A stretch of DNA of 64,000 bases from Guillardia theta CCMP2712 (taxonomy: Eukaryota > Protista > Cryptophyta): NCBI RefSeq assembly GCF_000315625.1, contig NW_005434569.1, forward strand, positions 1 to 64,000, in the 5' to 3' direction. Shown here piece after piece: positions 21,816-63,966 of this stretch. How positions within the stretch are numbered: position 1 is the stretch's first letter; the number at the start of each line of letters is the position of its first letter. Below the pieces are notes generated by a model that was given only the letters and a program-made list of their open reading frames with translations, was not told where the DNA came from and did not search any database. A program made the position numbers and the translations under genes.

Positions 21816-24400
21816 TCAAACACGACTGAAGTTTGACCCAACTGTGTCAAGTCGATTGCGATCGAGGCTGCCCAGCAGGCTGTGAGCTGGGCTGCCGTGT
21901 TGGAGACTTGATTGGAGGTAGGGAGATTGTCGTGTCATCAACACATAGTCACCTGCTAGAGATCAGCAGGCAGGTGGTAGAAGAAGGAAGGAGACAGAGG
22001 GGAGAACGGGAACACGCGAGCGAGGCTGGGAGACAGGGCTAGGCAGGAGGAGTGGGGGCTAGCAAGAAGAAACTTGTACCTGCATGCTCTTCACGTGAGC
22101 GCCGTCGTCCAGACCTCTCGCATCACCCTGGTCCCTCCTGAAATCTCACGCTTAGCCACCAGTGATGAACGAGTCGTCTGACTTGTCCGGGGAGGAGACG
22201 ACCGGGGCCCGTGCGAGGGAGGCCAACAGGCTGCTTTCCACTGGTTCTCCTGCTGCCTGCCAGGGAGGTTGAGGCGGAAACTGTGAGACGAGTTAGATGA
22301 GAGAAGAGGAAGGACAGGACAGGGAGAAGAGATGATAAGATAAGAATCAACAACAAGTTGAAGGCGGGGAGGGAGAAGTAGGAAGGGGGGGGGCAGCGGA
22401 GGGAAGGGAAGGGTATGGAGGAGGCAGGCGTGCATAGATGGGAGTGCGGAGCAAGTTGCCTGTCGGTCGGGAGAGGAGGCGACCATGCTCTGCCTGCTGG
22501 CAGAGATCTTCATCTCGTCGATGTACCGGTAGGACCTGACGAGCTCCTCCTGGAGGTAGAGGATGTCGAGGTGGACCTTCTCGAGGATGGGGGTGAGCGT
22601 GGAGCTGCATTCTTGGACCTTCGACGTCCTCTCCTCCTCCCTCGCGCGGCATCCTTCCTCCCTCTCCTGCTGCGCGCGCGCGATCTTGCTCCAGAGCCCC
22701 ATGGCCGTGAGGGCGAGGTCACGACCGTTGGCGTCCTCCCTCGAGACTGCATCCTCCCTTGCCAGGTTGAGGTAGTGGGACAGCAGCGCCTCCTCGGGGA
22801 GGTCAGCACACAGCTGCCGTTGGACCACGACCTCCAAGACTTCGTTGGTTCTTGCCCTCCTCAGCCTCAACTTCACCGTCTCTCCCGCGCGGTCGCTGCC
22901 GTCCAACATGCCGTTGACGTTCCAGGTCGTCGCTACCTGGTCGTTGACGGACATGATGACGTCACCTTGCTCTATCGTGTTGCTGTTGAACGCTGCGCTC
23001 CCCACCATAACATGCACTATCTCCAGCCCATCAAGCACAAGCCCGACTGTCGTTCTCTTGCTGAAGGACTGGGCGTTGCCACATGTCGCTCGTTCGAGAG
23101 CATCTCGACTCTCATTGACCTCTTGCAGCATGTTGGAGATGAGGTGGCATCGGAAGACGTTCTGCAGCAATCTCTCGCATCCCTTGGCGCGGTTCTCATG
23201 AGAGACGGCGAGCATGCTGTTGAATTCATCCTCGTTGACGACATTTGACGAATCTCTCTTGCTCTGCTCAGCCAGCACCTGCGGCCTCCGAGTCTGATCG
23301 TACTCATTCAGGAACACAATCTTGGCCGAGATCGAAGGGTTGGGCTGTGGCACGGGTGGAGTGGTAGGAATCGAGCCGTTGACGGATTGCCTTTGATGAA
23401 TCCATTCCTGATAACAACTTAATGTTCCAGCCTTCATATCATCGTATCTTCACAAGTTTTGATCATCCTCTACATAGCCATCATCATGTCGGACCAACAA
23501 AATCTTACCGGAAACGGAACTTCCTGGGATGCAATCGTATTCTGCTTCACAGACGAAGCCCTGTCTTTCTCAAGCTCTTCTATCCTCTGCTTAAGTTGAT
23601 TGATGGCCTGCGTGTTATCCGCATTTTTCCGCTGCTCAGTTTGCAATCTCTCCTCAGCGCTACTCAGCAAGTCCCTCAGGCAATCATTCTGAACCAGCAG
23701 CTCGTCCTGTCCCACTTGCTCCATCCCCGGAGGTTCATTTTTCTCTGCCTCGCCATCCGCAGCCAGCGAAGACCGTTGGAGCCAGAGGGCAAACGTCTTC
23801 CCCTGCCTCTCGAAATCCACTCGAACTTGCGACCTCGCTGGCCCCCTCAGCAGGCTTATCGTGTGCCCTGTGCTCTGCACGTTGACATTGTTGGCGGCTA
23901 CAATTCTGTCCCCCACCTTCAAGACGGCTTGTCAGTGGGAGGAGGAGGAGGAGGAGGAGGAGGAGGAGGAGGAGGAGGAGGAGGGATCACAAGGGAACAC
24001 CTGTATCAACTTGCTCTGCATGGCAGGACACCCGGGCTGGAGCTCCTTCACGAGCACCAACTTCCTCGTTCCATCGCTCGACAGAGAGCATTGGACGATC
24101 ATCCCGACCCCTCCTACGGGACTCGGACATGCATTAGCTGAGCCGTTCATACCCTCTTGTACTCCTCGATTGACCTGAGGGCTCTTCAGTCAAAGGATGA
24201 GAACGCATTATAGTCGAGCATGAAGCTCTCGTTGCAGACGGGTGATTGGATCGCCTGCAAATGTGTGGAACACTTCTATACGCCCAGCACTTGTTGACAA
24301 TTTCCGTTACATGCACAGAAAATTCACAGAGGACTGCATGACTGGGTTTGTGTCAGATCGCTGAAGGTGATGCTGATAGATGTGTGTGTGACATTGATCC
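21816..24400 (-). CDS. Protein with two PDZ domains and coiled coils, multi-exon (start approximate)
   Basis: PDZ1 GGVGMIVQ...VKELQPGCPAMQSKLIQ / VGDRIVAANNVNVQ...SLLRGPARSQVRVDFER. PDZ2 TTVGLVLDGLEIVHVMVGSAAFNSNTIEQGDVIMSVND...GSDRAGETVKLRLRR. Confidence 0.8.
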
Positions 24401-49572: not shown

Positions 49573-52500
49573 ATGGCGGTACAGGAGTGCAAGGAATGCC
49601 AGGTAACAAGCATTTCGTTCCATCGTCTTCCTTCCAGCCTTCATCTCACTTCTCTCAACACCCCTAACATCACTCTTCCACCTCTCTCCTCCTCTTGCGT
49701 CCCCTTCGCTCCCCTCCCCCACTGTCTCCTCGCCTCGCCTCGCCTCCCCTCTCCCAGTCTCGTGACGCCTCCTGCTAGACCCCGATCATGGTAGGAAACA
49801 AGTCGAATCCCAACGTCTGTGTAAGTTGCACTGCCCTTGCAAATGAAGCATCGCTGAGCTGACTCGTAGGCGGTAAGTGCGACGCTTCTCCATGGATGAT
49901 GCGCTGAAATCTGAGTCACTCCATCAAACGTTATGTGAAATGGTCTTCTCAGGCGGTATTTCCAACATGATCATCATCCCTTGTTCGACTAACACCCCTC
50001 TGCTTCTTCTCTTCTACCTTGGCTGACTCGACGCCTCTAGGGAGTGAGTTCTCCCTTACGAGTGTTGCAACAATCACTCACTATGTTTCTTCTCCTTCTG
50101 CCGTTCCCGTCACCTTCCTGCCTCTTGCTATCAGCGAGTGAGACTTGTTCTTTTGTTCCCATATCCCATCACATGCTGATGTGTTTTGGTTGCGATCGTC
50201 CCTTTGCCGACGGGCGCTCTACAGTTTGTGAGTTTTTGCGCTTGTTTCCTTGGCTGGCACATTTGACTGTGAAATCTTCTCTTGCCCTCAACATGGCAGG
50301 AGGTGCGCTGAAACAAGACGATGCCATCATCCGATGCTGACTATGAGTTCTTGACCTCGAATGCAACTACCGCCTTGTTCCCAGGCTGTGAGAGTCATTG
50401 GGGGGTTGAAAGCATATGATACTGACTTGTTTTGTTTTTTTTGGATGTTTCCCGGTTTCGCTCAGCATGTGAGTAGATACTTTCTGCCTTGTTGAAGCCC
50501 ATTAGAGCCTGCTCATTTCTCCTTGCTGACTTTGCTTGTTTCATCGTTGCTCTACCTGGGCTGGCGCCTGGTCCTAACACACCTGAAAACAGTGGGTGAG
50601 TCAACTATCAAGTCAATATGTTGAGAACTTCTGACATGTGTGTTTTGTGTTGCCGGTTGAAACGTAACAGACGGTAAGAAAATCAATCTCAATGTCGACT
50701 GTTTCATCTTTGACGCACATTCCTCTTGTTTGAACGCCCTTCTCTTGACTGCGCCACGTAGTGGGTGAGTGCGTGAAATCTCATTTCCTACTTCTTGTAT
50801 GTTTGTTGCAGAGACTGATCGTTTACTCAACCTTGATCGTTTTTGATACGACATGCGATATGATGATGATCAGATGGTAAGTGATGAAGAATAAGAGTTG
50901 TCTCCACTATTCCCATCTCCTCCATTCTTGTCAGACGCTATCTCAACATCACTGAAGGGAATATCTTGCAGGCGGTATGTACCAGTGTACCTTGCTTTCC
51001 TCGCTAAAATTTGCCCCATCGCCATCTGAACATGGTCTACGAATGAATCAGGCGGTGAGCAGAGGGCCAAGGGTAAGGGATACACTGATACTGACACGTG
51101 TTACTTTCCTTGTTATCTCGATGTGCCTTCTCGCATTCAGCTGGTGAGTTTCAATGTCTTCTGTGTATCTGGATTGATCATTTCAATTCTTTGCACTGAT
51201 TGCGACATGTATGATTGCAGTTGGTAATGATGATATACTCATACAAAACAAGTTGTAACAAGAATGTTTTTCTTACATTCGCTTTTCCACCTGCTTTCCC
51301 GGCCTAACAGATCGTAAGTTCGAATCAAATTTTGATCAGATCTCTTGTCATTGTTCTTTGATGGAAGTCAACTTTGCCTGTCTGTTTACATCTGAATGTG
51401 ACAGGTGGTAAGCTCAAGCGTTCTCCTGGATCTGCTGCACGCTGATCAGCCTCGGCATATTCCACTTGTTCAAATCGTCTTGCTCGACCGCAGCTGGTAA
51501 GTATCTTGTGACTGTACTGCCTGACTGATAATGGTTTGCTCTTTGATAAACTGCTGCTGATCTATTGGTTGCAGTGGGTGAGGAGTTTAATGTTGGTTTG
51601 AGACAAGCTTGATGATTCCTCTTACTGCTTCTGCTGCGTTCGGGCACTCTTTTCTTCGGATCAGATTGTGAGTATTTCATGCACATTGTGAAAAACTGGA
51701 TTTTGGCCCTGACATTTGTATTAAAAACCTGTGTTTTTGATTTGTGCGATCAGGTTGTAAGTTTGCTGAAAGTGATCATTGAGGAAACTGACAAGCTGTG
51801 GTTGGTTTGTTCTCAACTTGCTCCGTTAGCTCGTAAGTCTTGTTTCGTCGTGGTGAGGGTCAACTGAACAACCTTTGTCTTGTTTTATTGGATTTGGGAA
51901 TGACATTGACGACTATCAGTGGGTGAGTTTCACTGATTCCCATCGGATAAAACCACTGACATGTCTTCTCTTGTTGTCTCTTGCCCTTTCCTGCTTACCC
52001 TCAATTTCCAACTTCATCTTTTCTGCTCTTCTCTGTTCTTTTACACAGGGGGTAAGTTGAGTCTGGTTCGAATCCAAGGATGTTTGATCAACTGACATGA
52101 TATCTCTCACGTGTATACTCTCATTTCTGCTCCATCAAGACGGTAATACAACCTCCGCTGCCTCTCCTTGACACGAAAGAATGACAAGATGTTTCGTATG
52201 CGAACCTCTTCGATCTCACTTTCATCGTTCGTGAAGCTCGTGAGTGATGAACTAGCCTGTAATATCAACTGAGATCTCATTCGCTTTTCGTTTTGCAGGG
52301 AGTATGTTCCATTCACATCTCAGAGGCTTGTTTTCACTCACTTCATTTCATCTTTCCTCGCCATTTGTTGCAAACTCTTTCCTTGTCGTATAGGTGGTGA
52401 GTATTCACCTAAGAATTCGATTCAACATGTCATTGAGAAGAAACTTTCTTGTTGCAGGTGGTAAGAAAGCTTTCGATCTTGAAGATGATGATTTCATGAT

Positions 52501-55500
52501 TACTTCTCAACTTTTATAATCACTGCCTCTCACACTCACTGCTGTCTATAGCTCGGGGTAAGTTGTCACATTGCAATGCCAGCAGCACAACTGACACTCC
52601 TCTGAATCGATTTCTCCTATTCTCATGCAATCGCCACAGAGAGTAAGTCTATGTGTATTGTTACAACATGAATTGACTCTCCTTCACAGACCTCAAATGT
52701 ATCTGCATCTTCAGTTGTACGATGTGATCTGACTTGCTTCGCTTCTTGGACCTGCCCTGGTTGATAGAATGCGTTTGTGAGTTGTGGAACCAAATCATCT
52801 GGCATGCGTTTACTTATCATTTCTTTCCGTTTGCTTCTTCGTTGGATTTCTGATTGCCAACAGTTTGTAAGTTGATGATATCACATCTCCGGCGTTGTTG
52901 TTAGCTCTGACTGATCGTTGTTTTGTATTTTGTTTCCACAGGCGGTGAGTTGAGTGTACTGGAAAAGTACATCTTTTCCCCTGCTGATGATGTTGAAAAA
53001 TCTCGGACTGTGTTCGGCCAATCAGATTGTAAGTATGGAGAGGAAATGTTAAGAATCTGACAATTTCTTCTCTATTCGATCTTGTTCTTCTTGTCCTCAG
53101 GCGGTAAGACAACGCCATGTTCATAAGACTTCTTCTTACAATTTCTCTTCCCTTCTTCGTCTTCCTTGGTGTCAATCAGGCGGTGAGTGCAAATTTCAAG
53201 TCTGACTTTCTTGTTTGTGATGCTCTGTTTTCAATCAGGTTGTAAGTTCGAGTTTGTGTTTCATTTTGTTCTTCTCACTTTTCATGGTCTCTGCTCCTGC
53301 TCTGCTACACCCTTCATGTCACAGGCGGTGATATCAGTCTTCAACCTCCTGCCCTTCTGACTGAACTCGTTTCTTGCTTCTCGCCTGCCCAACCCTTCGA
53401 ACATGACAGCTGGTAAGTCTGAACTTTGAATCTTTTCACATTGGTGTCGCGATAACTGATGAATTGTTGTCTTTATTGTATTCAACCTCCTTCAGTCGGT
53501 AAGATGCATCGAATGCAACACAGCACGACTGATTCTCTGTCCTCTGAATCTCGACCATATCTTTACTTCAATCAGCCGGTGAATGGAACATCTCATACGG
53601 AGTTTGTTGCTGACGCAATCCCCTTCTTGCCGATCGTTTGAAATGCGACGGACTTTTTCCCTGAGAAGGCGGTACGAGAATCAGTTCAAAGATGCTGCGC
53701 ATGCTGATATGATTGTTCCTCACAACTTGATGGACCGACGGCGAGCAGTTGGTCAGTACGAACATGTCGATCGTTTGAGAGTCGACTGAGACGTTTCTTA
53801 ATCCTCCTCTTCTCCCTTGATCGCAGCTGGTGAGTACCCAGCAAGACGATCAGATGCTGTTCGTTCACTGACTTGTTTGTAACACAGTTCGTGAGTTTGC
53901 TCAAAGTTCACTTGTTCTCGAACTGATGGTGTTCCGACGATGCAAACAATTCTCTGCCTTGTCAGGGCGTGAGTGAACGACTTCTTGGCGATCACAACCT
54001 TGACTTCATATTTGATTTCTTTCATGTACTTCGTCTCTTGTTGTGGTTGTGCAGGTGGTAAGTCGGTAGCGATTGGAAAATTCTCTCTCATAACGATTGT
54101 GCATGTGCGATGATGGTGCTGTTTGAAATATCAGCCGGTGAAGATTTTTCTTGTCTTTGCCTGAAAGCAAGAAGCGGAACTGAAGCTGATTTTTCTCCAA
54201 CCGTGCGATCAAAACATGGACAGGGTGTAAGTCTAAATGCTTTCACTGATTGTGGTGTGTCTGACAATGGTGCATTTGCAGAAATCGGTGAGAAAGAGAT
54301 GTGATTTTTCATGCAATTTACTCAATGACTGCGACAACAAATCTGAATGTTTGCATACAGAGATCAAGCGTAAGTTCTTGCACAATATTCTCTTGAATAC
54401 CTGACGCTTTCTTGTAATACTTTCTCGGACTGCTTCTCGTCTGCCCTACAGTGGGTGAGATTTTTGATTGAGATTGTTGCAATTTGAACATAGAAATGTG
54501 ATACTGAATTTTTTCTTCCATCTGCTTGATTGCCACTACCCGCGGACAGAACGGAAGGGTTGATGATTTGAGCGATGCTTTCCTGTGACTGAATGTTTGT
54601 TTTGGGATGTTGCTTATATACAGCATCACGGGGTGACTGATTCAAATCCATCGCTTGTACTTCACTGACCTTGTTTCCGATCTTTCTTTGATCAACTTGC
54701 AGCATACGACGGTGAGTTTGTGCAGACTTCTTGTTTTCAGCACGATGTTGAATGACATGCTGTCATGTTGTTTCTTGTTGCTCTCAACATCTGTCGACAA
54801 CTCAGAGCGTTGTAAGTTTCATGATTGCCCATCTTTTGATCTCTTAATTTCCTTGCAGTGGGTGAGAATCTGCAACAAGTCATCGTATTGAATGACTTGT
54901 TTCTTCTCTTCTTTCTCTCCGGCACATTCATCGAGACAGATTGTGAGCTGTTTGAATCAACCATATGCAAGTCCATCTGAATATTTGCCATGTTTGCTAT
55001 TTGCGAATTTTTCTCCTTCTCTCTAGTCGGTGAGCATCAGTGATACTCTTCACATGTGTTCTGACGAGTTTGATGTTCAACGACGAATTCGTTGTGAGGA
55101 AAGTGTGTGAGTTCTCAACACTTTCTAGATTCTTACTGACATGTCTTGCATGTGATTTCACGACAATTTTGATGCTCAGCCGGTAAACCAACATTGTTGT
55201 CGTTGAACTGATCAAACTCATTATCAACTGCCTTCCTTAAACTCTACCCGACATCGGATGGACGGGACGTACAGTGGGTGAGTTGTTGTTGCCTTGGCTT
55301 TGAGTAAGTGCATAACGTTCTTCATGTGACTGCAAATCTTCTTCAATGAATGCAAAACATCAGACGGTAAGGAAGCAACATGCATGTTCAATCAGATTGT
55401 TGCCTTGATATCTCAATTCAAGTTTCTGTAGTCGAACTGAAGTGACTTTGTTTCTCAGCCGGTGAATGCTTTGTATTAGTGAAAGCAAGCCCTGACCAGA

Positions 55501-57653
55501 CCGCTTTTTCTCTCTTCTGCCTGTCATTATCTTACATCGGTTTGGATAGTACGTGAGTGAACAGAGGCAACTTGGAGAGCTTGCTGTCATCTGACTTCTG
55601 CTTTCAGATTGTGAGTTTGCTCGAAAACAATATTCTTTTCTTTCCTCAGCCCGTTCTGATACGCTCTTTCTCCTTGCTACGATGATTTGTTCTGCCATGG
55701 AGCAGTCGGTAAACAGCTACTGGACTTGTTTGTCATGAAAGACTCTGATCATTGTGAAATCTATTGCCCTCCCTCTTCAACACTCAAGTCGGTAAGTCTG
55801 CCTGTGACTCCGGCAGTCTTGCTGACTTCGTTCTTCCTTTTGCTTCTTCAACCCGCCTCCGCAATGAATCAGCAAGTAAGTTCGCAAACTGATCTTGTCT
55901 TAAACACTTGACTCTGTTTTACCCCAGATCGTAACATCACCTCTTCTTCTCTACTTAATTGCTGATGAAAACTTGTGTTGGTCTGCTGTTGTGAACGCCA
56001 ACATGTTCAGCGGGTGATAACATCAAGACCTCTGCATAAGTGGCAACTGATGACTTGTCTTTGCTTACTTGATGTCGCCCCTCTCCTACAACAGACTGTA
56101 AGTTTGCTTCTTGTATGCTGTGGACAAGAACTGACCTTTGGCTTGACAATCTGCTCACTCGACCTATCGACACAGTTTGTAAGATCTTCAGTCCTTTTGC
56201 GCTTTGTAATGATTCGTATCTCTTCCTCCTCGCGTTACCCTGCTATCCTCGCAACGAACAGTTTGTGAGTTCAACTTGTAAAGCACAGCTGTCAGGATTC
56301 TTACTGACACCTTCCTTGTTTGCCTGTCGTCATGCTGCAATATTCTAGTGGGTAAGAGATGCGTCAGAAACTTTCATTCTCAGCTGATCTTATTCTATCT
56401 TCGTCCTTTTTGCCCTCCTCTTCTTGGTTGTCCTTCTCTTTCTCTCTTTTTCTCTCTCTCTCTCTTTCTCTTTTTCTCTTTTCTGCAACTTCCTCCCCCT
56501 CTCTCTTTATTCACAGCAGGTGAGCCCTTCAATCAAGTTTGAAGCTTTCCTCTGATATCCAATTTCTACTCCTTGGGAATTACATGGACGTCGCAGAATG
56601 TGAGTTGACGATCAAGATTGCTTTGTTCCTGCAAGAATTCCTGACTTGATGATTTGCTTCCTTTCTCTTTAATCATGAACAGCTTGTGAGTTTCTTTGTG
56701 ATTTTCTCCTTCTTCTTGACCTTGTTGCTTTCTCCTCAATCGTCTCATCTTGTTCCTCTTCAACGTCAGTTCGTAAGTCTCTAGCGCCTTCCTTTCTCCT
56801 CCCCCTTCCATAACCTTCTCTTTTCAAACTCGACCGTCTCCATTCTCCGGCTGTCAAACGTAGCGAGTGAGTCGAACTATACATGTCTTGCTTTCATTCT
56901 GATCCTCATGTCTTGACCAGGGGGTAATGTATCCTTGATTCCTCCCACGTGTTCTCACCAGCGTTCTTTCAAACCAACACGGGATCGTTTGGAGCAGAAG
57001 GTGGGTGTCTGTTACTGACTTCAAACCTGATTATTTCCTTGTTCTGCTCTCTTTGGACTGACAATCTTGTTCAGAACGTAAGTCTTTCATCTACTCACCG
57101 GGCCACTTTTCTCTCTGAAGGAATTTCTTGACAACTCAACAAACTTCCGCACTCCTCTCAGTGTTGTGTAAGTCCTTCAACTTTAGATGCTGATCATGGA
57201 TAACTTTGTCTTGGACAGATTGTATGATGATTCAACGTCGTCAAAGACTTTTGACTTCTCAATGCAGTGCGACCAGAAAGCAGGATGGACACGATTCGAA
57301 CGGGTGCGTCAAATTGTCTTGCGTTCCCCTGAATGCATCTGTCCTCCTTCCCTCTTTTTCATTCCCTCCCTCCCTCCCTCCCTCCTTCCCTCCCTTTCCT
57401 TCCTCTAATCTTCATCACAGAGGGCATGCCTGCAGTGCAGGCAGCGAGCAAACCCTGGAGCTGTCCACCTGTTCCCCCAGCGAATCAACATATCCCTCGA
57501 CCCTGTGCAACTCAACAGAGCAGCAGGAGCTCCAACTCCTTTCCCTGCCCCTGCTGCACTCGGCGCGTTGAATCCCGAGCAGCTTGCAGCGTACAACAAC
57601 ATCCTTGAAGGTTTCAACACCTCCAACCTGCAAAACAACAGCACCAACAACAA

Positions 57654-57684
<31 letters not shown>

Positions 57685-58022
57685 AGCAGTGTCCCAGTGC
57701 AGCATCGTGGCGCCAACGTGATCGAGGCTCTGCGATCGGCCGGCCTTTCACAGAATGAGATCAACGAGGTCTATCCCAAGCTGGTGGCTGCCGGGGTTCA
57801 GACGACAGCAGACTTCAAGTTCATCCGCGACCTGAGCGAGCTAGGGGACCTGAGCTTGTCGATAGTGAGCAAGAGGAAGCTTGCTGACTGCCTGTGAGTA
57901 TGTTCGCTCCACCACCTCCACCTCCACCTCCACTTCCACTTCCACTTCCACCACCTCCTCCTCCTTCTCCTCCTCCTTCTCATGTTTCTGATCTTTCAAT
58001 TTCTTGCAGCGGACTTGAGTGA
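49573..58022 (+). CDS. Micro-exon gene (~93 exons, ~78 of them single-codon 3-nt exons) encoding a ~307-aa two-TM protein with Cys motifs and a C-terminal SAM-like domain
   Basis: Exon 1 49573-49602, exon 2 49779-49820, 88 small phase-0 exons 49870-57221 each bounded by (C/T/A)AG and GT donors, then 57268-57303, 57421-57893 and 58010-58022. The concatenation is stop-free and in frame with the large terminal exon: MAVQECKECQTPIMVGNKSNPNVCAAGRFEAHWTWMAALLIVLWIVLWGTLGVVLGRTSNVSASSVNAFFAIAAVALSPALLFGVPGKSRSSWNGRHHGHTTSVWISCPWTPYISSQIRTFFWQNLFRGKNCCICDQKAGWTRFERRACLQCRQRANPGAVHLFPQRINISLDPVQLNRAAG...NVIEALRSAGLSQNEINEVYPKLVAAGVQTTADFKFIRDLSELGDLSLSIVSKRKLADCLGLE*. Confidence 0.88.
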
Positions 58023-58385
58023 AAGGAGGCCATGCCGGTGGTTGGTTCTGATTTGACCTTGGTGCCCTCCAGTTTCGTAGAACACAGCCGTCTCATTGCC
58101 CTTGGATGAAAGCGCATTATTGCAGACTTGCTTTAGGAGGTGATAAAGACGTGATTAGAATACAAGCATAGAAGTTAGAAACCGAAACATGACAAAACTG
58201 GTTGTGGTGGAAATGACTTGTGAAAAATCAACTATCCTGTCTCATCTCTTCTCGCATCTCTCCCCTCTCCCCTCTTTCCTCTTTCCTTCATCTCTCCTCC
58301 CTCCCTCCCTCCCTCCCCCCTCTTCTCTATACCTCTGCTTCCTTCCTCCTTCCTCCTTCCTCCTTCTCTCCTCTCTCATTCCCTC

Positions 58386-58485
58386 NNNNNNNNNNNNNNN
58401 NNNNNNNNNNNNNNNNNNNNNNNNNNNNNNNNNNNNNNNNNNNNNNNNNNNNNNNNNNNNNNNNNNNNNNNNNNNNNNNNNNNNN
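58386..58485. other. Assembly gap (100 N)
   Basis: Run of N. Confidence 1.
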
Positions 58486-58659
58486 CCCTCCCTCCCTCCC
58501 TCCCTCCCTCCCTCCCTCCCTCCTCCCTCCCTCCCTCCCTCCCTCCTCTCCTCCCTCCTCCTCCCTCCCTCCCTCCCTCGCTCCCTCTCCCTCGTGGCTT
58601 TCTTGGGGGTTGTGTGAGTGGATAGCGTTGTAAGCGTAAAGAATTTGGATCCTCGTGCG

Positions 58660-59813
58660 ATGATATCTAGAAGCATCAAAACAATCCTGTTCTGCACGAT
58701 ATTTGGCTGCTGCTGCATCCCATGCAAGGGGGAAATAGATTCCGGCAAGAGTCTGTTCGAGTGGTTGGAGGAGGAAGGAGGAAGCGTGCTTGACGGAGTA
58801 AGTGTCGGAGGAACACCGAGGGGATTGATAGCAGAGAAAGAATTTTCACCCGGGGATATCATCGTCACCGTTCCTCTGAAACATGCTATCAATCTTGGTA
58901 CTGCTTCGTCCTCGACGGAAAGTGCGGCTATCCTGCTACGAGAAAGATACAGAAAGAGCCGGCGGAGATTTGATCCTTACCTCCAGTCCCTTCCCAAGAT
59001 AGAAGAGCTGATGACGGTCGACCTCGCAGATGAAGACGACATCTGGTGGCTTCAATCCCCTGACCTCATCGAAGCAGCATGGCGATGGAGGAACGCCACG
59101 TTGGCGGGGTACAGGAGCATTGGGAGCAAGAGCTTTATGTTGGGCGGACGCCATCTCACCCTCAACGAGTATCGGTGGGCCGTATCTATCATCTCCTCGC
59201 GCTCCCTTGCCATCGTCGCGCCCAACGGGGACATGTTGAAATATCTTATCCCTGTGATGGATCTGGCGAATCACCAGGAGGAAAGCAAGCATCATGTCAG
59301 GTTGGCCGATGGCGCCCGGGCGTTCCACCTAGTATGCGGTCAGCCTATCAAGCCGAAAGAGGAGATCAGAATCAGCTATGGTCCTCTTAGAGGAGACGAG
59401 ACCGTTCTCTTCTACGGGTTCCTGCTGGAGCCTCCCTCTTCGCTCCAACCCTTCGCAGGTAACGAGGCTCGGCCTCCCTCTCAGCTCAGTCTCTCCTCAT
59501 CCTCAGTTGATGTCACTCTAGCAATGCTCTGACCCGATTTGCTGCGACAGTTGATATGCCAGGATGGACTCCGGATGCTCCTCCTCCTCTTCTTCGCTAT
59601 CAACCTGTCTCGGTGGTGACATCTCTGGAGTCCGAAATTCAGCGAGTCCAGAGCAAGCTTTCCATGCTCAACACCAGCGTTGCTTCGCAGAGTCGAGCTC
59701 CTTTCTCGAAGTTCGCTCAGATGTACCAAGACATGCACGCTATGAGGATAGAATCTCTCAGGCACGAGCTGCAACAACTTCAAAGGAGGGGCGCAGTGAG
59801 TGATCATACATAA
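58660..59813 (+). CDS. SET-domain methyltransferase, Rubisco LSMT / SETD3-like, two exons
   Basis: LFEWLEEEGG, RGLIAEKEFSPGDIIVTVP, YLQSLP, YRWAVSIISSRS, LIPVMDLANH, EEIRISYG, LFYGF. Confidence 0.9.
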
Positions 59814-61259: not shown

Positions 61260-63966
61260 TGTATCACATTAGTATGGTGCATTGAGTCGGTTCCAAGAGA
61301 CTCAGGCCACATTTTCTGTTCATCACTAGTGGTTAGAGACACGTGCCTCCTGATAGTTTTGTGATCACCTTCTTGCACCACAATCGATGCGCTGAGATAG
61401 CAGCCTGATCAGAAAGAGAGTAAGTTTGTTTGTTCGATCAATTCCACAGCAGTCCATACATGTCTCTTGGATGGTTCTTTACAGAAGACGCGGACTCCAT
61501 GCATAATTTGATCGCGAGGAAGAATGCTTCCATACCTTACAAAAATTCAAGGTTACTTCGACTGCCAAGACAAATCTACATCATCGTTGCGTTACCTGTT
61601 CTGGCTCACTCTTCTTGCAACCCAAAGACCTTTAACTGAAGCTTCCTTCTCGGAAGAGAAAAAGAAAACCTACCAAACACATCAGACAAAAAAACGTCAA
61701 ACGCTACAAAGGCTGACCTCATCGACAGGATTTTTCGATTTCTTCCCATGGTGCACACTCCATTTCTCAACGATGAGGTCGTCGGCTGACAACTGACCCG
61801 CACTAGGAGCATTCTGATTTCCTCCCTTCACTGGAGTTCGGCTTTGAGAAAGAAACTCCTCATTCATCGGTTGCGATCCTCTATCATCTAAAGGATACTC
61901 TACATCGCTGTTTTGCTCGTCTGGCGTGTCCGGAATACAAACTAGAAAGTACTCGTCAATTAGCAGAGCGAAGAAATCGCATGGTCACCATTTTCTTCTT
62001 CCCAGAGAGATAACATCTCTTGCTTCAATGCATCTACAGAGGTTTTGATTGGATGACTATCGGTTTGAGAATCAGCTGAAACTGAATTGCCTCCATGCCT
62101 TGCATCGACGAAGTTCATCTGAAACCTCAATCAAACACATAGCAGTGAAATCAATTTAGAAACCGGTGTGTTTCCGACAAACTTGTAGAAGTCGTGGCGC
62201 TGATACCGATGGAGAAGCGCTCTCGCACATTGCATATCCTGAGCATGGGATTCAGCTGATTTGTATCAAGAAGGAGATTCGTTACCTCATCTTCACTTTG
62301 AAAATTATAAATATTCGAAAGAATGTGATCATCAAGGTTGACAAATGCTGCGGGATCATATATCGCTTCTTCTATCGGTACTCTGTTGGTAGAAATCAGC
62401 TTGTAAAGTCCATTGGAATTCTGAATTACCTCCTCACAAGACGAGCAGTATCCTTGTCGTAACACGGCACAGTGTAATGCTTGAAAGCAAGCTTCAACAC
62501 ATCACGGATCAGATACTCGACTGCCTTGACGTTCCTATGAGTATAGACCTGAAAATTGGAATCAGAGTCAAGACTGTTTGATTTCTGTGGTTATATTACA
62601 CCTTCCAGTGCATGTTGAATCTAATTTTGAAGATTTCCATAGCTTCAGGGGCTAACTTCTCTGGCCAACATATGCCCCAACGTCCTTGTTTTGTCGGCTC
62701 ACCATCCTTATCCAATTCTGGGCACCAACATACCTTTGAGCAAACGTAAATGTTGAGAACGAGACTGAAATTGAACAAGAAAGAACTCACTCGTGCAAGG
62801 TCTATGAAGCGATACGGCTGCTTATCTTCTTCTCCCAAGGAAACTTTCTTGTCTCGCATGAAATAATCCAACTTGTCGATGTCTAAGCCGCTATGTGCGT
62901 TGTTTATAATGTCATACAGAAAGTTCTTCTCTGGGCCACGACCCCGGCGAGCTTCAATTCCTCCTCCATTACGCTTTCCACCGTCAAGATCATCACCAAC
63001 AATCAGCTCTTCTATGAAACGAAGATCATTGACTGGATCTAGACCGTAGTCTTCCAGACGGATATTGTTGTCTCGGAGCAGATACTTGAGCATTAAAACA
63101 CTCATCTCCTCATGGGCCCAGTCCAAGCCCATATCCTGACAGATCATTGTTTCGAACATGTGGCTGAAAGGCCCATGGCCAAGGTCATGACACAATGCCG
63201 CAACTTTTACACAGAGCTTGTCTGCCTCCGTGATTTTGGCTGGAATGGAATATGTGCATGAACCATCTTCATTCCGTTTGGAAGGCAACGCAGGGTAACC
63301 CTTCTGCTCCCTCAGATTCTCCCAATACTGATTGATTGCTGAAAGCTCAATTTCAGGGGATCGATACATGATAAGACGGCAAAAAACAACCTGGAAACAT
63401 GCGCCTCAACTTCTTATCCTTCCGCCGTTGTTCCTCAAGGGTCTGCATCATCCTTGTAGCAAGGTGCATTGCCCCAACACTGCCAAACGCTGCTTGTGAG
63501 ACTCGAAAATACAAAAAGTGTGTGTACACGAACCTGTGCTCAAACCTTGTATGGTTAGCAGATCGGAAAACATTTTCACAAAGTCCAAGCTGCTTCAACT
63601 GCTGTAGCCTTTGGAACTGTTTCGTGTCCATGATTCTAATTATCAATGGATCCAACTCAATCTGAGAGATATTATTGGCGAAGTGAGATGAAAGATACAA
63701 AACTCTACCTGGCCGTATATTCTGTCGTGGAATGTTTTGGTACGAAGGCCAACCGAGCGGAGGATTGGCGTCAAAGGAAAGTTTTGAGTGCCTACGACCG
63801 ACAAGTGCTGCTTCTTCGGAACCTCAAAGTCATAGCTTTCTTCAGTTTCATGATCAACATCTGATGATTTGCGTTTTCCTCCTTTCATTCCTTCAAAGTC
63901 ATCAAACTCTCTTGGTTTGGAGGCTTTGTTAGACATGTAATAATTCAGGATAGTCTGTTGAGACAT
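61260..63966 (-). CDS. SAMHD1-like HD-domain deoxynucleoside triphosphate triphosphohydrolase, multi-exon (3' end approximate)
   Basis: [36 protein letters not shown]...[16 protein letters not shown]; [20 protein letters not shown]; WAHEEMS; [24 protein letters not shown]; [21 protein letters not shown]. Confidence 0.92.

What the first reader, a model, noticed from the sequence alone, without database searches (positions are those of the whole stretch)
49870..57221. A gene spelled one codon per exon: ~78 three-nucleotide exons in a nearly uninterrupted array
Seen: the pattern [C/T/A]AG-NNN-GT(R)AG(T)-like recurs about every 85 nt for 7.4 kb, separated by non-repetitive, pyrimidine-rich 46-165 nt introns with CTGAC/CTGAT branch-like motifs. 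Exon starts and residues: 49870 A, 49953 A, 50041 G, 50135 R, 50225 F, 50300 E, 50385 A, 50466 H, 50593 W, 50671 T, 50762 W, 50874 M, 50972 A, 51052 A, 51141 L, 51221 L, 51311 I, 51405 V, 51494 L, 51575 W, 51665 I, 51754 V, 51830 L, 51920 W, 52049 G, 52140 T, 52237 L, 52299 G, 52394 V, 52458 V, 52552 LG, 52640 R, 52690 TSNVSASSV (or TSN), 52768 NAF, 52864 F, 52942 A, 53026 I, 53101 A, 53180 A, 53239 V, 53325 A, 53410 L, 53496 S, 53576 P, 53669 A, 53749 L, 53827 L, 53888 F, 53966 G, 54055 V, 54135 P, 54224 G, 54282 KS, 54361 RSS, 54452 W, 54550 NGR, 54624 HHG, 54703 HTT, 54806 SV, 54859 W, 54940 I, 55027 S, 55104 C, 55180 P, 55275 W, 55364 T, 55459 P, 55550 Y, 55608 I, 55706 S, 55789 S, 55873 Q, 55928 I, 56011 R, 56095 T, 56176 F, 56262 F, 56349 W, 56517 Q, 56597 N, 56683 L, 56770 F, 56864 R, 56921 G, 56998 K, 57075 N, 57162 CC, 57219 I. 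By my count 78 exons are 3 nt, four are 6 nt, five are 9 nt and one is 27 nt. All are multiples of 3 and phase 0, none contains a stop, both other frames hit TGA early, and the chain joins an ATG exon to a large terminal exon in frame. Known: isolated 3-nt micro-exons and Schistosoma micro-exon genes exist, but I know of no described gene with runs of about 30 consecutive single-codon exons. Inference: this is an extreme, expressed micro-exon gene that ORF finders and spliced aligners would miss.
Basis: partly seen in the sequence, partly recalled or inferred. Interest (0 to 1): 0.98.

Follow-up and report, generated by a model that had tools for sequence, protein, structure and literature searches.

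The report
Gene with 88 tiny spliced exons
In the alga Guillardia theta, about 104 amino acids of one gene are written in 88 consecutive exons, most of them a single codon long, and public RNA data show these codons really are spliced together, a gene layout not described in the papers I could search and missed by the genome's annotation.

Summary
All 88 listed micro-exons sit exactly where stated: 78 of 3 nt, 4 of 6 nt and 6 of 9 nt, one of which may be 27 nt. Each is flanked by YAG/AAG and GT and is in phase 0. The motif occurs 74 times in the window against 12.8 expected, and 59 of those lie in 49867-57082 on the + strand.

RNA-derived contigs from two public runs spell the predicted codon chain letter for letter at five places, and those strings are absent from the genome. 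This shows splicing directly for roughly the 3' half. The 5' half is inferred.

The assembled CDS has 92 exons, 867 nt and 288 aa. It extends GUITHDRAFT_117106, which is annotated as 172 aa. It encodes two hydrophobic helices, a CxxC-x13-CxxC motif and a helical C-terminus.

That motif, with the same exon split, follows shorter single-codon arrays at 12 or more other loci. This is therefore one gene family, and this array is the longest my scans found.

This scan had already reported such arrays on other DNA of this genome.

A metagenome scan also found 69 stop-free arrays of 3-nt units in other eukaryotes; one contig looks Amanita-like. No paper describing this was found.

The parts
49788..49820 (+). 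First coding exon (ATG; MVGNKSNPNVC), followed by a GTAAGT donor
   Evidence: Sequence read and an in-frame join to the array. It was not covered by the RNA lay-out, so it is inferred.
49870..57221 (+). Array of 88 phase-0 micro-exons (78 x 3 nt, 4 x 6 nt, 6 x 9 nt) separated by 47-165 nt GT..AG introns. It encodes 104 aa, including two hydrophobic helices.
   Evidence: The order of the triplets clusters hydrophobic residues (p = 0.005 by permutation).
52690..52716 (+). Exon with two possible donors: 9 nt (TSN, ends 52698) or 27 nt (TSNVSASSV, ends 52716)
   Evidence: Both are in frame. No RNA letters were shown here, so this is unresolved.
53496..54226 (+). Ten single-codon exons (S P A L L F G V P G), read contiguously in an RNA contig
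   Evidence: Loose end of an X2 contig before 54282. 30 letters were shown of 168 in total, and they match the CDS at index 174.
54282..54369 (+). Exons KS (6 nt) and RSS (9 nt), with the intron between them (54288-54360) retained in contigs of two runs
   Evidence: X2 record 7 and X3 record 14.
54452..55106 (+). Nine exons (W, NGR, HHG, HTT, SV, W, I, S, C), 48 nt in total
   Evidence: The X2 loose end after 54369 spells the first 30 nt. The X3 joint 54369->55180 has exactly 48 letters between its sides.
55180..55552 (+). Exons P, W, T, P, Y. Intron 55183-55274 is retained in one contig and the next three introns are removed.
   Evidence: X3 record 14 and the loose end ACGCCGTAC after 55277.
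56095..57221 (+). Exons T F F W Q N L F R G K N CC I, read contiguously in RNA contigs
   Evidence: X2 loose ends before 56921 and before 57268, and the X3 joint 57167->57268 with ATT between its sides.
57268..57303 (+). 36-nt exon (CDQKAGWTRFER), the middle of the CxxC-x13-CxxC motif and the family signature exon
   Evidence: The joint 57302/57420 is seen in X1, X2 and X3. The same exon is found in 12 paralogous loci.
57421..57893 (+). Large exon: RACLQC, an Asn/Ser-rich linker and a helical C-terminal domain
   Evidence: 100% identical to P0001. No Pfam family matched. There is a weak SAM-like lead only.
58010..58022 (+). Last coding exon (GLE + stop). The 3' UTR is covered to about 58207.
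   Evidence: The joint 57893->58010 is present in the contig pieces of X2 record 13 and X3 record 15 (table 8). The stop is shown.

Best explanation
This is a real, transcribed protein-coding gene of Guillardia theta. It is the true, longer form of GUITHDRAFT_117106. Its N-terminal 104 residues are encoded by 88 consecutive phase-0 micro-exons, most of them one codon long. The ordinary spliceosome removes 91 short introns (median about 82 nt in the array) by intron definition and leaves one codon behind at each step. A 3-nt exon puts a 3' splice site and the next 5' splice site within the footprint of one spliceosome, so neighbouring introns are probably removed in turns rather than together (inferred). 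The introns seen lingering are isolated ones, mostly with weaker donors. The exon letters serve two purposes. They are codons, giving a stop-free frame and ordered hydrophobic helices. They are also part of the donor signal, because the third letter is G in 58% of the 3-nt exons against 26% in the large exons. The product is predicted to be a 288-aa protein (294 aa with the alternative donor) with two membrane helices, a CxxC-x13-CxxC cysteine motif and a helical C-terminus. It belongs to a G. theta family in which this motif always follows a single-codon array. All exons are 3n and all introns are phase 0. This fits growth of the array by adding intron-plus-codon units, where only in-frame additions survive. 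That origin is inferred: the introns of this array no longer resemble each other.
For: Splicing is shown: five loose ends or insertions identical to the predicted codon chains, a 48-letter insert of the predicted size, and the joints 57302/57420 and 57893/58010. These strings are in the assembled CDS and not in the window, and two of them are not in the assembly. For coding signal, there is no stop in 104 codons while the other frames have stops, and the hydrophobic clustering of triplet order gives p = 0.005. The third codon letter is G in 58% of 3-nt exons against 26% in large exons. For the family, '...CC x | C(A/D)(K/Q)xxGWxx(Y/F)xx | xxCxxC' with the same 6-nt, 3-nt and 36-nt exon split follows arrays at C33, C66, C12, C22, C60, C146, C308, C118 and C206 among others. 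One of these runs into a kinase. None of the G. theta chains of five or more 3-nt exons has a stop. Retained introns in X2/X3 contigs are isolated, in patterns such as retained-spliced-retained, and four of five have non-GTRAGT donors. Unit duplication is visible in another G. theta array, L010, where the mean intron score is 20.6 against 13.4 shuffled and the maximum is 47.
Against: RNA letters were shown only for exons from 53496 onward, and the first 42 micro-exons and the ATG exon are unverified. The RNA runs are recorded only as 'RNA?'; their cDNA nature is deduced from the spliced contigs. The evidence is assembled contigs at depth 3-9, not raw reads, and the one raw-read RNA run gave 18 reads, all but two near the 3' end. 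X1 holds long unspliced stretches of the array at a depth similar to the terminal exon, so much of the RNA may be unspliced, antisense or DNA carry-over. There is no proteomic or ribosome evidence. No homologue was found outside G. theta for the C-terminal exon. Tryptophan makes up 8 of 104 residues and third-letter G is frequent, so splicing needs may shape the sequence as much as protein function does. There is no trace of unit duplication in this array.
Confidence: 0.85

Rival explanations
1. The array is a combinatorial diversifier. Every exon is symmetric (3n, phase 0-0), so any subset can be skipped without breaking the frame, giving many protein variants from one gene.
For: All 88 exons are 3n and phase 0, which is the precondition for frame-safe skipping. 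X1 has one odd joint, 56084->56135, that removes the exon at 56095.
Against: Every RNA contig that crosses several exons includes all of them: 10, 9, 9 and 10 consecutive exons, and a 48-letter insert of exactly the full size. The X1 joint has CT..AC ends, not a sense-strand exon skip. Too few molecules were seen to exclude rare skipping.
Confidence: 0.06
2. The array is mainly a regulatory device. With 91 introns to remove in turns, it acts as a splicing delay or detained-intron gate on production of the C-terminal protein, and the encoded N-terminal peptide matters little.
For: Partly spliced forms are common in the contigs, and the same introns (54288-54360, 57078-57161) linger in two runs. 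X1 holds long unspliced stretches at a depth similar to the terminal exon. Codon third letters follow splice-site needs.
Against: The triplet order gives two well-formed hydrophobic helices (p = 0.005). The frame is open only in the coding phase. Paralogues keep the cysteine motif across the same micro-exons. A delay function and a coding function are not exclusive.
Confidence: 0.07
3. The array is a non-coding host for intron-borne small RNAs (snoRNA-, mirtron- or other intron-derived RNAs), and the triplets are mere spacers.
For: There are many short introns in a row, and CTGA-like and TGATGA-like words occur in some of them.
Against: There is no Rfam match at E <= 1 on either strand. The introns share no sequence. 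All spacers are 3n and stop-free and join two coding exons in frame.
Confidence: 0.02

Closest known systems
Micro-exon genes (MEGs) of Schistosoma (from my own knowledge: DeMarco et al. 2010, Genome Res)
   Same: Most of the coding sequence lies in runs of short symmetric exons whose lengths are multiples of three, flanked by ordinary first and last exons. These genes are missed by gene predictors.
   Different: MEG exons are about 6-36 nt and number about a dozen or two. Here 78 of 88 are a single codon. MEGs encode secreted proteins and are varied by exon skipping. Here the product looks membrane-bound and only full inclusion was seen. There is no sequence relation.
Isolated 3-nt micro-exons (Drosophila homothorax, PMC7392893; human MAP4K5, PMC8632122; plant micro-exons, PMC8831610)
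   Same: A 3-nt exon can be recognised and ligated by the spliceosome, and it is commonly mis-annotated.
   Different: Those are single exons or small clusters between normal-sized exons. None of the papers found describes tens of consecutive single-codon exons.
Recursive (ratchet-point) splicing of long introns in Drosophila and vertebrates (PMC6110457, PMC5126111)
   Same: A long non-coding span is removed stepwise at juxtaposed AG|GT sites. Adjoining sites cannot be used at the same time, so the order of removal matters.
   Different: Ratchet points leave nothing in the mRNA (a zero-length exon). Here each step leaves a codon, and the pieces are ordinary short introns with their own branch sites.
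Introns born from tandem repeats or tandem duplication (Rogers model; potato RdRp case, PMC4974935; from my own knowledge: Zhuo et al. 2007, PNAS, human introns from tandem arrays)
   Same: Repetition of a unit carrying splice sites creates new introns in series. This is the likeliest way such arrays grow.
   Different: Known cases add one or a few introns and give alternative, often non-coding products. Here the array is long, constitutive and in frame, and its units have lost all likeness.
Introner elements (Micromonas, Aureococcus, dinoflagellates, fungi; from my own knowledge: Worden 2009, Huff 2016, Gozashti 2022)
   Same: Families of look-alike introns multiply within a genome. The look-alike introns in array L010 and in the metagenome arrays recall them.
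   Different: Introners are dispersed, one per site and in any phase. They are not packed head to tail with one codon between. The introns of this window's array form no family.

Membership tests
Spliceosomal micro-exon gene (general sense) | Exons of 51 nt or less, bounded by AG and GT and joined in mature RNA | tested here: met
   88 of 88 sites. The codon chains are read in RNA contigs and are absent from the genome.
Schistosoma-type MEG | Symmetric 3n exons making up most of the CDS | tested here: met
   All 88 exons are 3n and phase 0. However, they make up 312 of 867 nt of the CDS, about a third.
Schistosoma-type MEG | Protein variation by exon skipping; secreted product | tested here: not met
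   Only full inclusion is seen in the contigs. The predicted product has two internal hydrophobic helices and no signal-peptide-like start. Sampling is thin.
Recursive splicing ratchet points | Juxtaposed AG|GT with a zero-length exon, leaving nothing in the mRNA | tested here: not met
   Three to nine letters remain at each site and are read in RNA.
Introner / introner-like element array | Introns share a family sequence | tested here: not met
   Mean pairwise score is 14.3 against 12.9 shuffled, and neighbours are no more alike. The feature is met in another G. theta array, L010, and in many metagenome arrays.
snoRNA / small-RNA host gene | Introns carry recognisable RNA genes | tested here: not met
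   No Rfam hit at E <= 1.
G. theta 'array + CCxC-GW-CxxC' family (defined here) | A single-codon array, then a 6-nt Cys-Cys exon, a 3-nt exon, a 36-nt exon C-x4-GW-x5 and an exon starting xxCxxC | tested here: met
   This gene reads CC | I | CDQKAGWTRFER | RACLQC. Twelve other loci have the 36-nt exon, eleven of them with xGCxxC in the next exon, and most have upstream 3-nt exons. This gene is a divergent member (DQ in place of AK).
Named zinc-finger families (RanBP2/NZF, others) for the cysteine motif | Match to a curated profile | tested here: not met
   Pfam gives nothing at E <= 5 for three spliced 35-aa peptides. Metal binding is a guess from the CxxC...CxxC spacing.
SAM domain for the C-terminus | Match to SAM profiles or fold | tested here: inconclusive
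   Pfam gives none. The AlphaFold model is poor, with pLDDT 48. The Atlas feature score is 0.81, below the level of trust.

The most novel reading that the evidence does not exclude
Arrays of single-codon exons are not a curiosity of one algal gene family but a widespread, overlooked gene architecture. The same layout, with stop-free triplets, occurs in at least 64 environmental eukaryotic contigs, one of them from an Amanita-like fungus. In many of these arrays the introns are 80-96% identical to each other while the codons between them are almost random. This points to a dedicated process that multiplies or homogenises an intron while leaving one free codon between copies. In effect it would be a way to write or diversify coding sequence one codon at a time.
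Probability: 0.4. Interest if true: 0.95.

Novelty: new variant of a known kind. Interest (0 to 1): 0.9.

Why it matters
This gene has 91 introns in an 867-nt coding sequence, about 105 introns per kb. By my recollection that is roughly ten times the density of the most intron-rich genes known.

It shows that a spliceosome can accurately process dozens of adjoining 3-nt exons. That bears on how small an exon can be, on whether neighbouring introns must be removed in a fixed order, and on how exon-junction marking and mRNA surveillance cope with a junction every three letters.

It also exposes a blind spot. Gene predictors and spliced aligners cannot see such genes, so proteomes of this alga, and perhaps of many fungi, are truncated or incomplete.

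If the arrays grow by adding intron-plus-codon units, they are a previously unrecognised route to new protein sequence.

Tried and rejected
- **Chance.** Rejected by shuffles and by the strand and place bias of the motif.
- **Repeat or introner family in this array.** Rejected. I also tested the IVLW/IVLW block for duplicated introns and found none.
- **Small-RNA host.** No Rfam hits.
- **Processed gene copy as the source of the spliced strings.** None in the assembly.
- **Function of the C-terminal exon.** Pfam gave nothing. The single-sequence AlphaFold model was too poor to search with (pLDDT 48). The Atlas gave only sub-threshold SAM-like and EcoEI_R_C hits. The homologue search returned only the annotated G. 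theta model.
- **Cysteine motif.** No Pfam family.
- **Naming the metagenome organisms.** One contig (L082) is Amanita-like by a neighbouring PNGase gene. The matching loci of A. phalloides and of a 90%-identical metagenome contig have no array. A second attempt, on L092, gave no names.
- **The 77-nt look-alike intron of L021/L114.** It is not structured (z = +0.9) and has no Rfam match.
- **Not done.** I did not search with the full spliced 288-aa protein or fold it. I did not make a second read lay-out over 49700-52300, because the cap is one call.
The lay-out only skipped three simple repeats.
Full report
**What is in the sequence.**
The window is contig C105 of an 87.1-Mb, 669-contig assembly. 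The terminal exon is 100% identical to GUITHDRAFT_117106 of Guillardia theta CCMP2712.

- Their lengths are 78 of 3 nt, four of 6 nt and six of 9 nt. The one at 52690 can alternatively be read as 27 nt.
- Every exon follows CAG (72), TAG (11) or AAG (5) and precedes GT. GTGAGT or GTAAGT make up 48 of the 88 donors.
- Introns are 47-165 nt with a median of 82. They are T-rich (35% T). In 54 of 89 there is a CTRAY word, the last one typically about 40 nt from the 3' splice site.
- HAGNNNGTRAG occurs 74 times in the window against 12.8 +/- 4.1 in dinucleotide shuffles. Of these, 59 lie in 49867-57082, all on the + strand.
- Beyond the splice signals the introns are unrelated to each other. The mean local score is 14.3 against 12.9 shuffled, and neighbours are no more alike than distant pairs.

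**Is it spliced?**
One lay-out of public runs on 52300-58299 was allowed. Contigs of runs X2 and X3 (one study, same species label) carry unaligned ends and insertions that are exactly the predicted codon chains:

| Place | Letters read in the RNA contig |
|---|---|
| before 54282 | TCG CCG GCG TTG CTG TTC GGC GTG CCG GGT (30 letters shown of 168) |
| after 54369 | TGG AACGGAAGG CATCACGGG CATACGACG (30 shown of 111) |
| joint 54369 -> 55180 | 48 letters between the sides, the predicted number for nine exons |
| after 55277 | ACG CCG TAC |
| before 56921 | ACT TTT TTT TGG CAG AAT CTT TTC CGA |
| before 57268 | AAT CTT TTC CGA GGG AAG AAC TGTTGT ATT |
| joint 57167 -> 57268 | ATT between the sides |

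- All five strings are found in my assembled CDS and nowhere in the window.
- Two of them, searched with up to two mismatches, are absent from the whole assembly. They therefore arise by splicing and not from a processed gene copy.
- The ordinary introns 57304-57420 and 57894-58009 are also removed.
- No contig joined an outer exon directly to 57268 or 57421.
- Limits: the letters shown cover exons from 53496 onward only; the evidence is assembled contigs at low depth; the only raw-read RNA run gave 18 reads, nearly all at the 3' end.

**The gene and its product.**
Joining 49788-49820, the 88 micro-exons, 57268-57303, 57421-57893 and 58010-58022 gives 92 exons, 91 introns and an 867-nt CDS of 288 aa ending in a stop.

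- The public model (172 aa) starts at an ATG inside the last array intron and reads through the last intron, so it lacks the first 116 residues.
- The micro-exons encode 104 residues. Two stretches (about residues 21-43 and 47-67) have 19-residue hydropathy of about 2.5 and 2.1, which fits membrane helices.
- Shuffling the order of the exons reaches that clustering in only 0.5% of trials. The order of the triplets therefore carries protein-like information.
- A CxxC-x13-CxxC motif follows (CCIC...CLQC), then an Asn/Ser-rich linker and a helical C-terminus with no assignable family.
- The triplets also serve splicing. The third letter is G in 58% of 3-nt exons, against 26% in the large exons of the same gene and 20-35% in other long ORFs of the window. 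This explains the excess of TGG, GCG, CTG and GTG.

**A gene family.**
Two genome-wide pattern scans (reversed-pattern controls gave 1 and 2 hits) found further runs of 3-nt exons on at least ten other contigs. This window gave the most hits by far (18 of the non-repeat triple hits, with 5 for the next locus).

- Decoding those loci showed that nearly all arrays end the same way. A 6-nt exon encodes Cys-Cys, then a 3-nt exon, then a 36-nt exon C-A-K-x-x-G-W-x-x-Y-x-x, then an exon beginning x-G-C-x-x-C.
- A strict pattern for the 36-nt exon finds 11 loci with no control hits.
- Of 13 loci examined (12 plus this gene), 12 have the CxxC in the next exon, and most have 5-16 upstream single-codon exons.
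- One member continues into a protein kinase. Another (C308) shares this gene's C-terminal domain.
- This gene reads CC | I | CDQKAGWTRFER | RACLQC, so it is a divergent member with the longest array.
- None of the G. theta chains of five or more 3-nt exons contains a stop.
- Pfam does not recognise the motif.

**How it probably works.**
What is shown: the exons are ligated in order, and partly spliced RNAs exist.

- In the X2/X3 contigs the retained introns are isolated among removed ones. One contig shows the pattern retained, spliced, retained, ten spliced, retained, three spliced. Another shows retained, spliced, retained.
- Two introns (54288-54360 and 57078-57161) linger in both runs.
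- Four of the five lingering introns have donors that depart from GTRAGT: GTGAAG, GTGAGA, GTAAAC and GTAATG.

What is inferred: recognition is by intron definition, using short, uniform introns with strong donors. Two spliceosomes probably cannot sit on introns that share a 3-nt exon, so neighbours are removed in turns and the weakest go last. This resembles recursive splicing, except that each step leaves a codon.

**Origin.**
Inserting an intron never changes the reading frame, so inserted introns could sit in any phase and leave exons of any length. Here all 91 introns are phase 0 and all 88 micro-exons are 3n. This is what is expected if the array grew by adding intron-plus-exon units and only in-frame additions survived.

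- Another G. theta array (L010) still has look-alike introns.
- This array has none. Its origin is therefore inferred, and either it is old or its introns evolve fast.

**Beyond this genome (side finding, partly followed).**

- In 69 arrays on 64 contigs with ten or more 3-nt units and six or more distinct triplets, there are 1637 triplets with 9 stops, against 107 expected from position-wise composition. Sixty-two arrays have none.
- The longest has 69 units.
- One contig carries a PNGase gene 79-80% identical to Amanita proteins. The matching A. phalloides locus has no array.
- In many of these arrays the introns are 80-96% identical to each other, while the triplets are close to random, with per-site identity of 0.3-0.4.
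- Two arrays from different samples share one 77-nt intron with a period of 80 nt. That intron is not structured and matches no Rfam family.
- Simple duplication followed by neutral drift does not explain this. There is no RNA evidence for these arrays.

**Known or new?**
Full-text searches found no paper that holds both Guillardia and microexon. They also found no paper on runs of single-codon exons, only isolated 3-nt exons in fly, human and plants. One paper abstract returned by these searches says that functional micro-exons had not been described in filamentous fungi before it (PMC11121469, listed).

This scan had already reported such arrays, spliced, at other loci of this genome (s1-431588, s1-436876; s1-431662). 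I confirmed independently that other loci exist, and I add the shared family motif and the metagenome arrays. I rate the finding a new and extreme variant of micro-exon genes, with high interest.

Noticed in passing
L015-L134 (metagenome contigs), e.g. L022:47-5329, L133 (- strand), L060:977-4770, L082:2636-5014: At least 69 arrays of 10-69 three-letter 'exons' between 60-80 nt GT..AG units occur in soil, ectomycorrhiza-type and other metagenome contigs. Their 1637 triplets contain 9 stops against 107 expected. One contig (L082) is Amanita-like by a neighbouring gene. There is no RNA evidence.
   Followed up: partly
L021 (- strand, units at 656-1780 of the reverse strand) and L114 (- strand, 1300-3300): Two arrays from different samples share one 77-nt intron with a period of 80 nt. 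Within each array the introns are 86-94% identical, but the codon between them differs almost every time. Across 64 arrays the introns are much more alike than the triplets. This is unexplained. Possible causes are homogenisation of the introns, a constraint on them, or a copying process that leaves a free codon.
   Followed up: partly
window 56084-56135: A contig of run X1 skips 50 nt, including the exon at 56095, with CT..AC ends. That would be GT..AG on the opposite strand. It could be an antisense intron, a deletion allele or an assembly quirk. X1 also holds long unspliced stretches of the array at a depth similar to the terminal exon.
   Followed up: no
L010 = G000:C33:172000-181000, array at 3238-4469 (+): This G. 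theta array of 12 single-codon exons has introns that still resemble each other (mean score 20.6 against 13.4 shuffled, maximum 47). It lacks the CAK..GW exon by my regular expression.
   Followed up: partly
window 57262-57264 and 57894-57896: The public model GUITHDRAFT_117106 starts at an ATG inside the last array intron and stops at a TGA that is the first letters of the last intron. Both of its ends are therefore annotation artefacts.
   Followed up: yes
window 49620-49770, 56400-56510, 57340-57410, 57900-57990, 58230-58385: Long CT-rich (CTCC/CCTC) low-complexity tracts flank the gene and fill several of its longer introns. The assembly gap at 58386-58485 follows one of them.
   Followed up: no
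window 22091-23437 (-), 58618-59532 (+), 62596-63369 (-): Neighbouring long ORFs carry PDZ, SET and HD/phosphodiesterase-like domains. They are ordinary genes and were not examined further.
   Followed up: no
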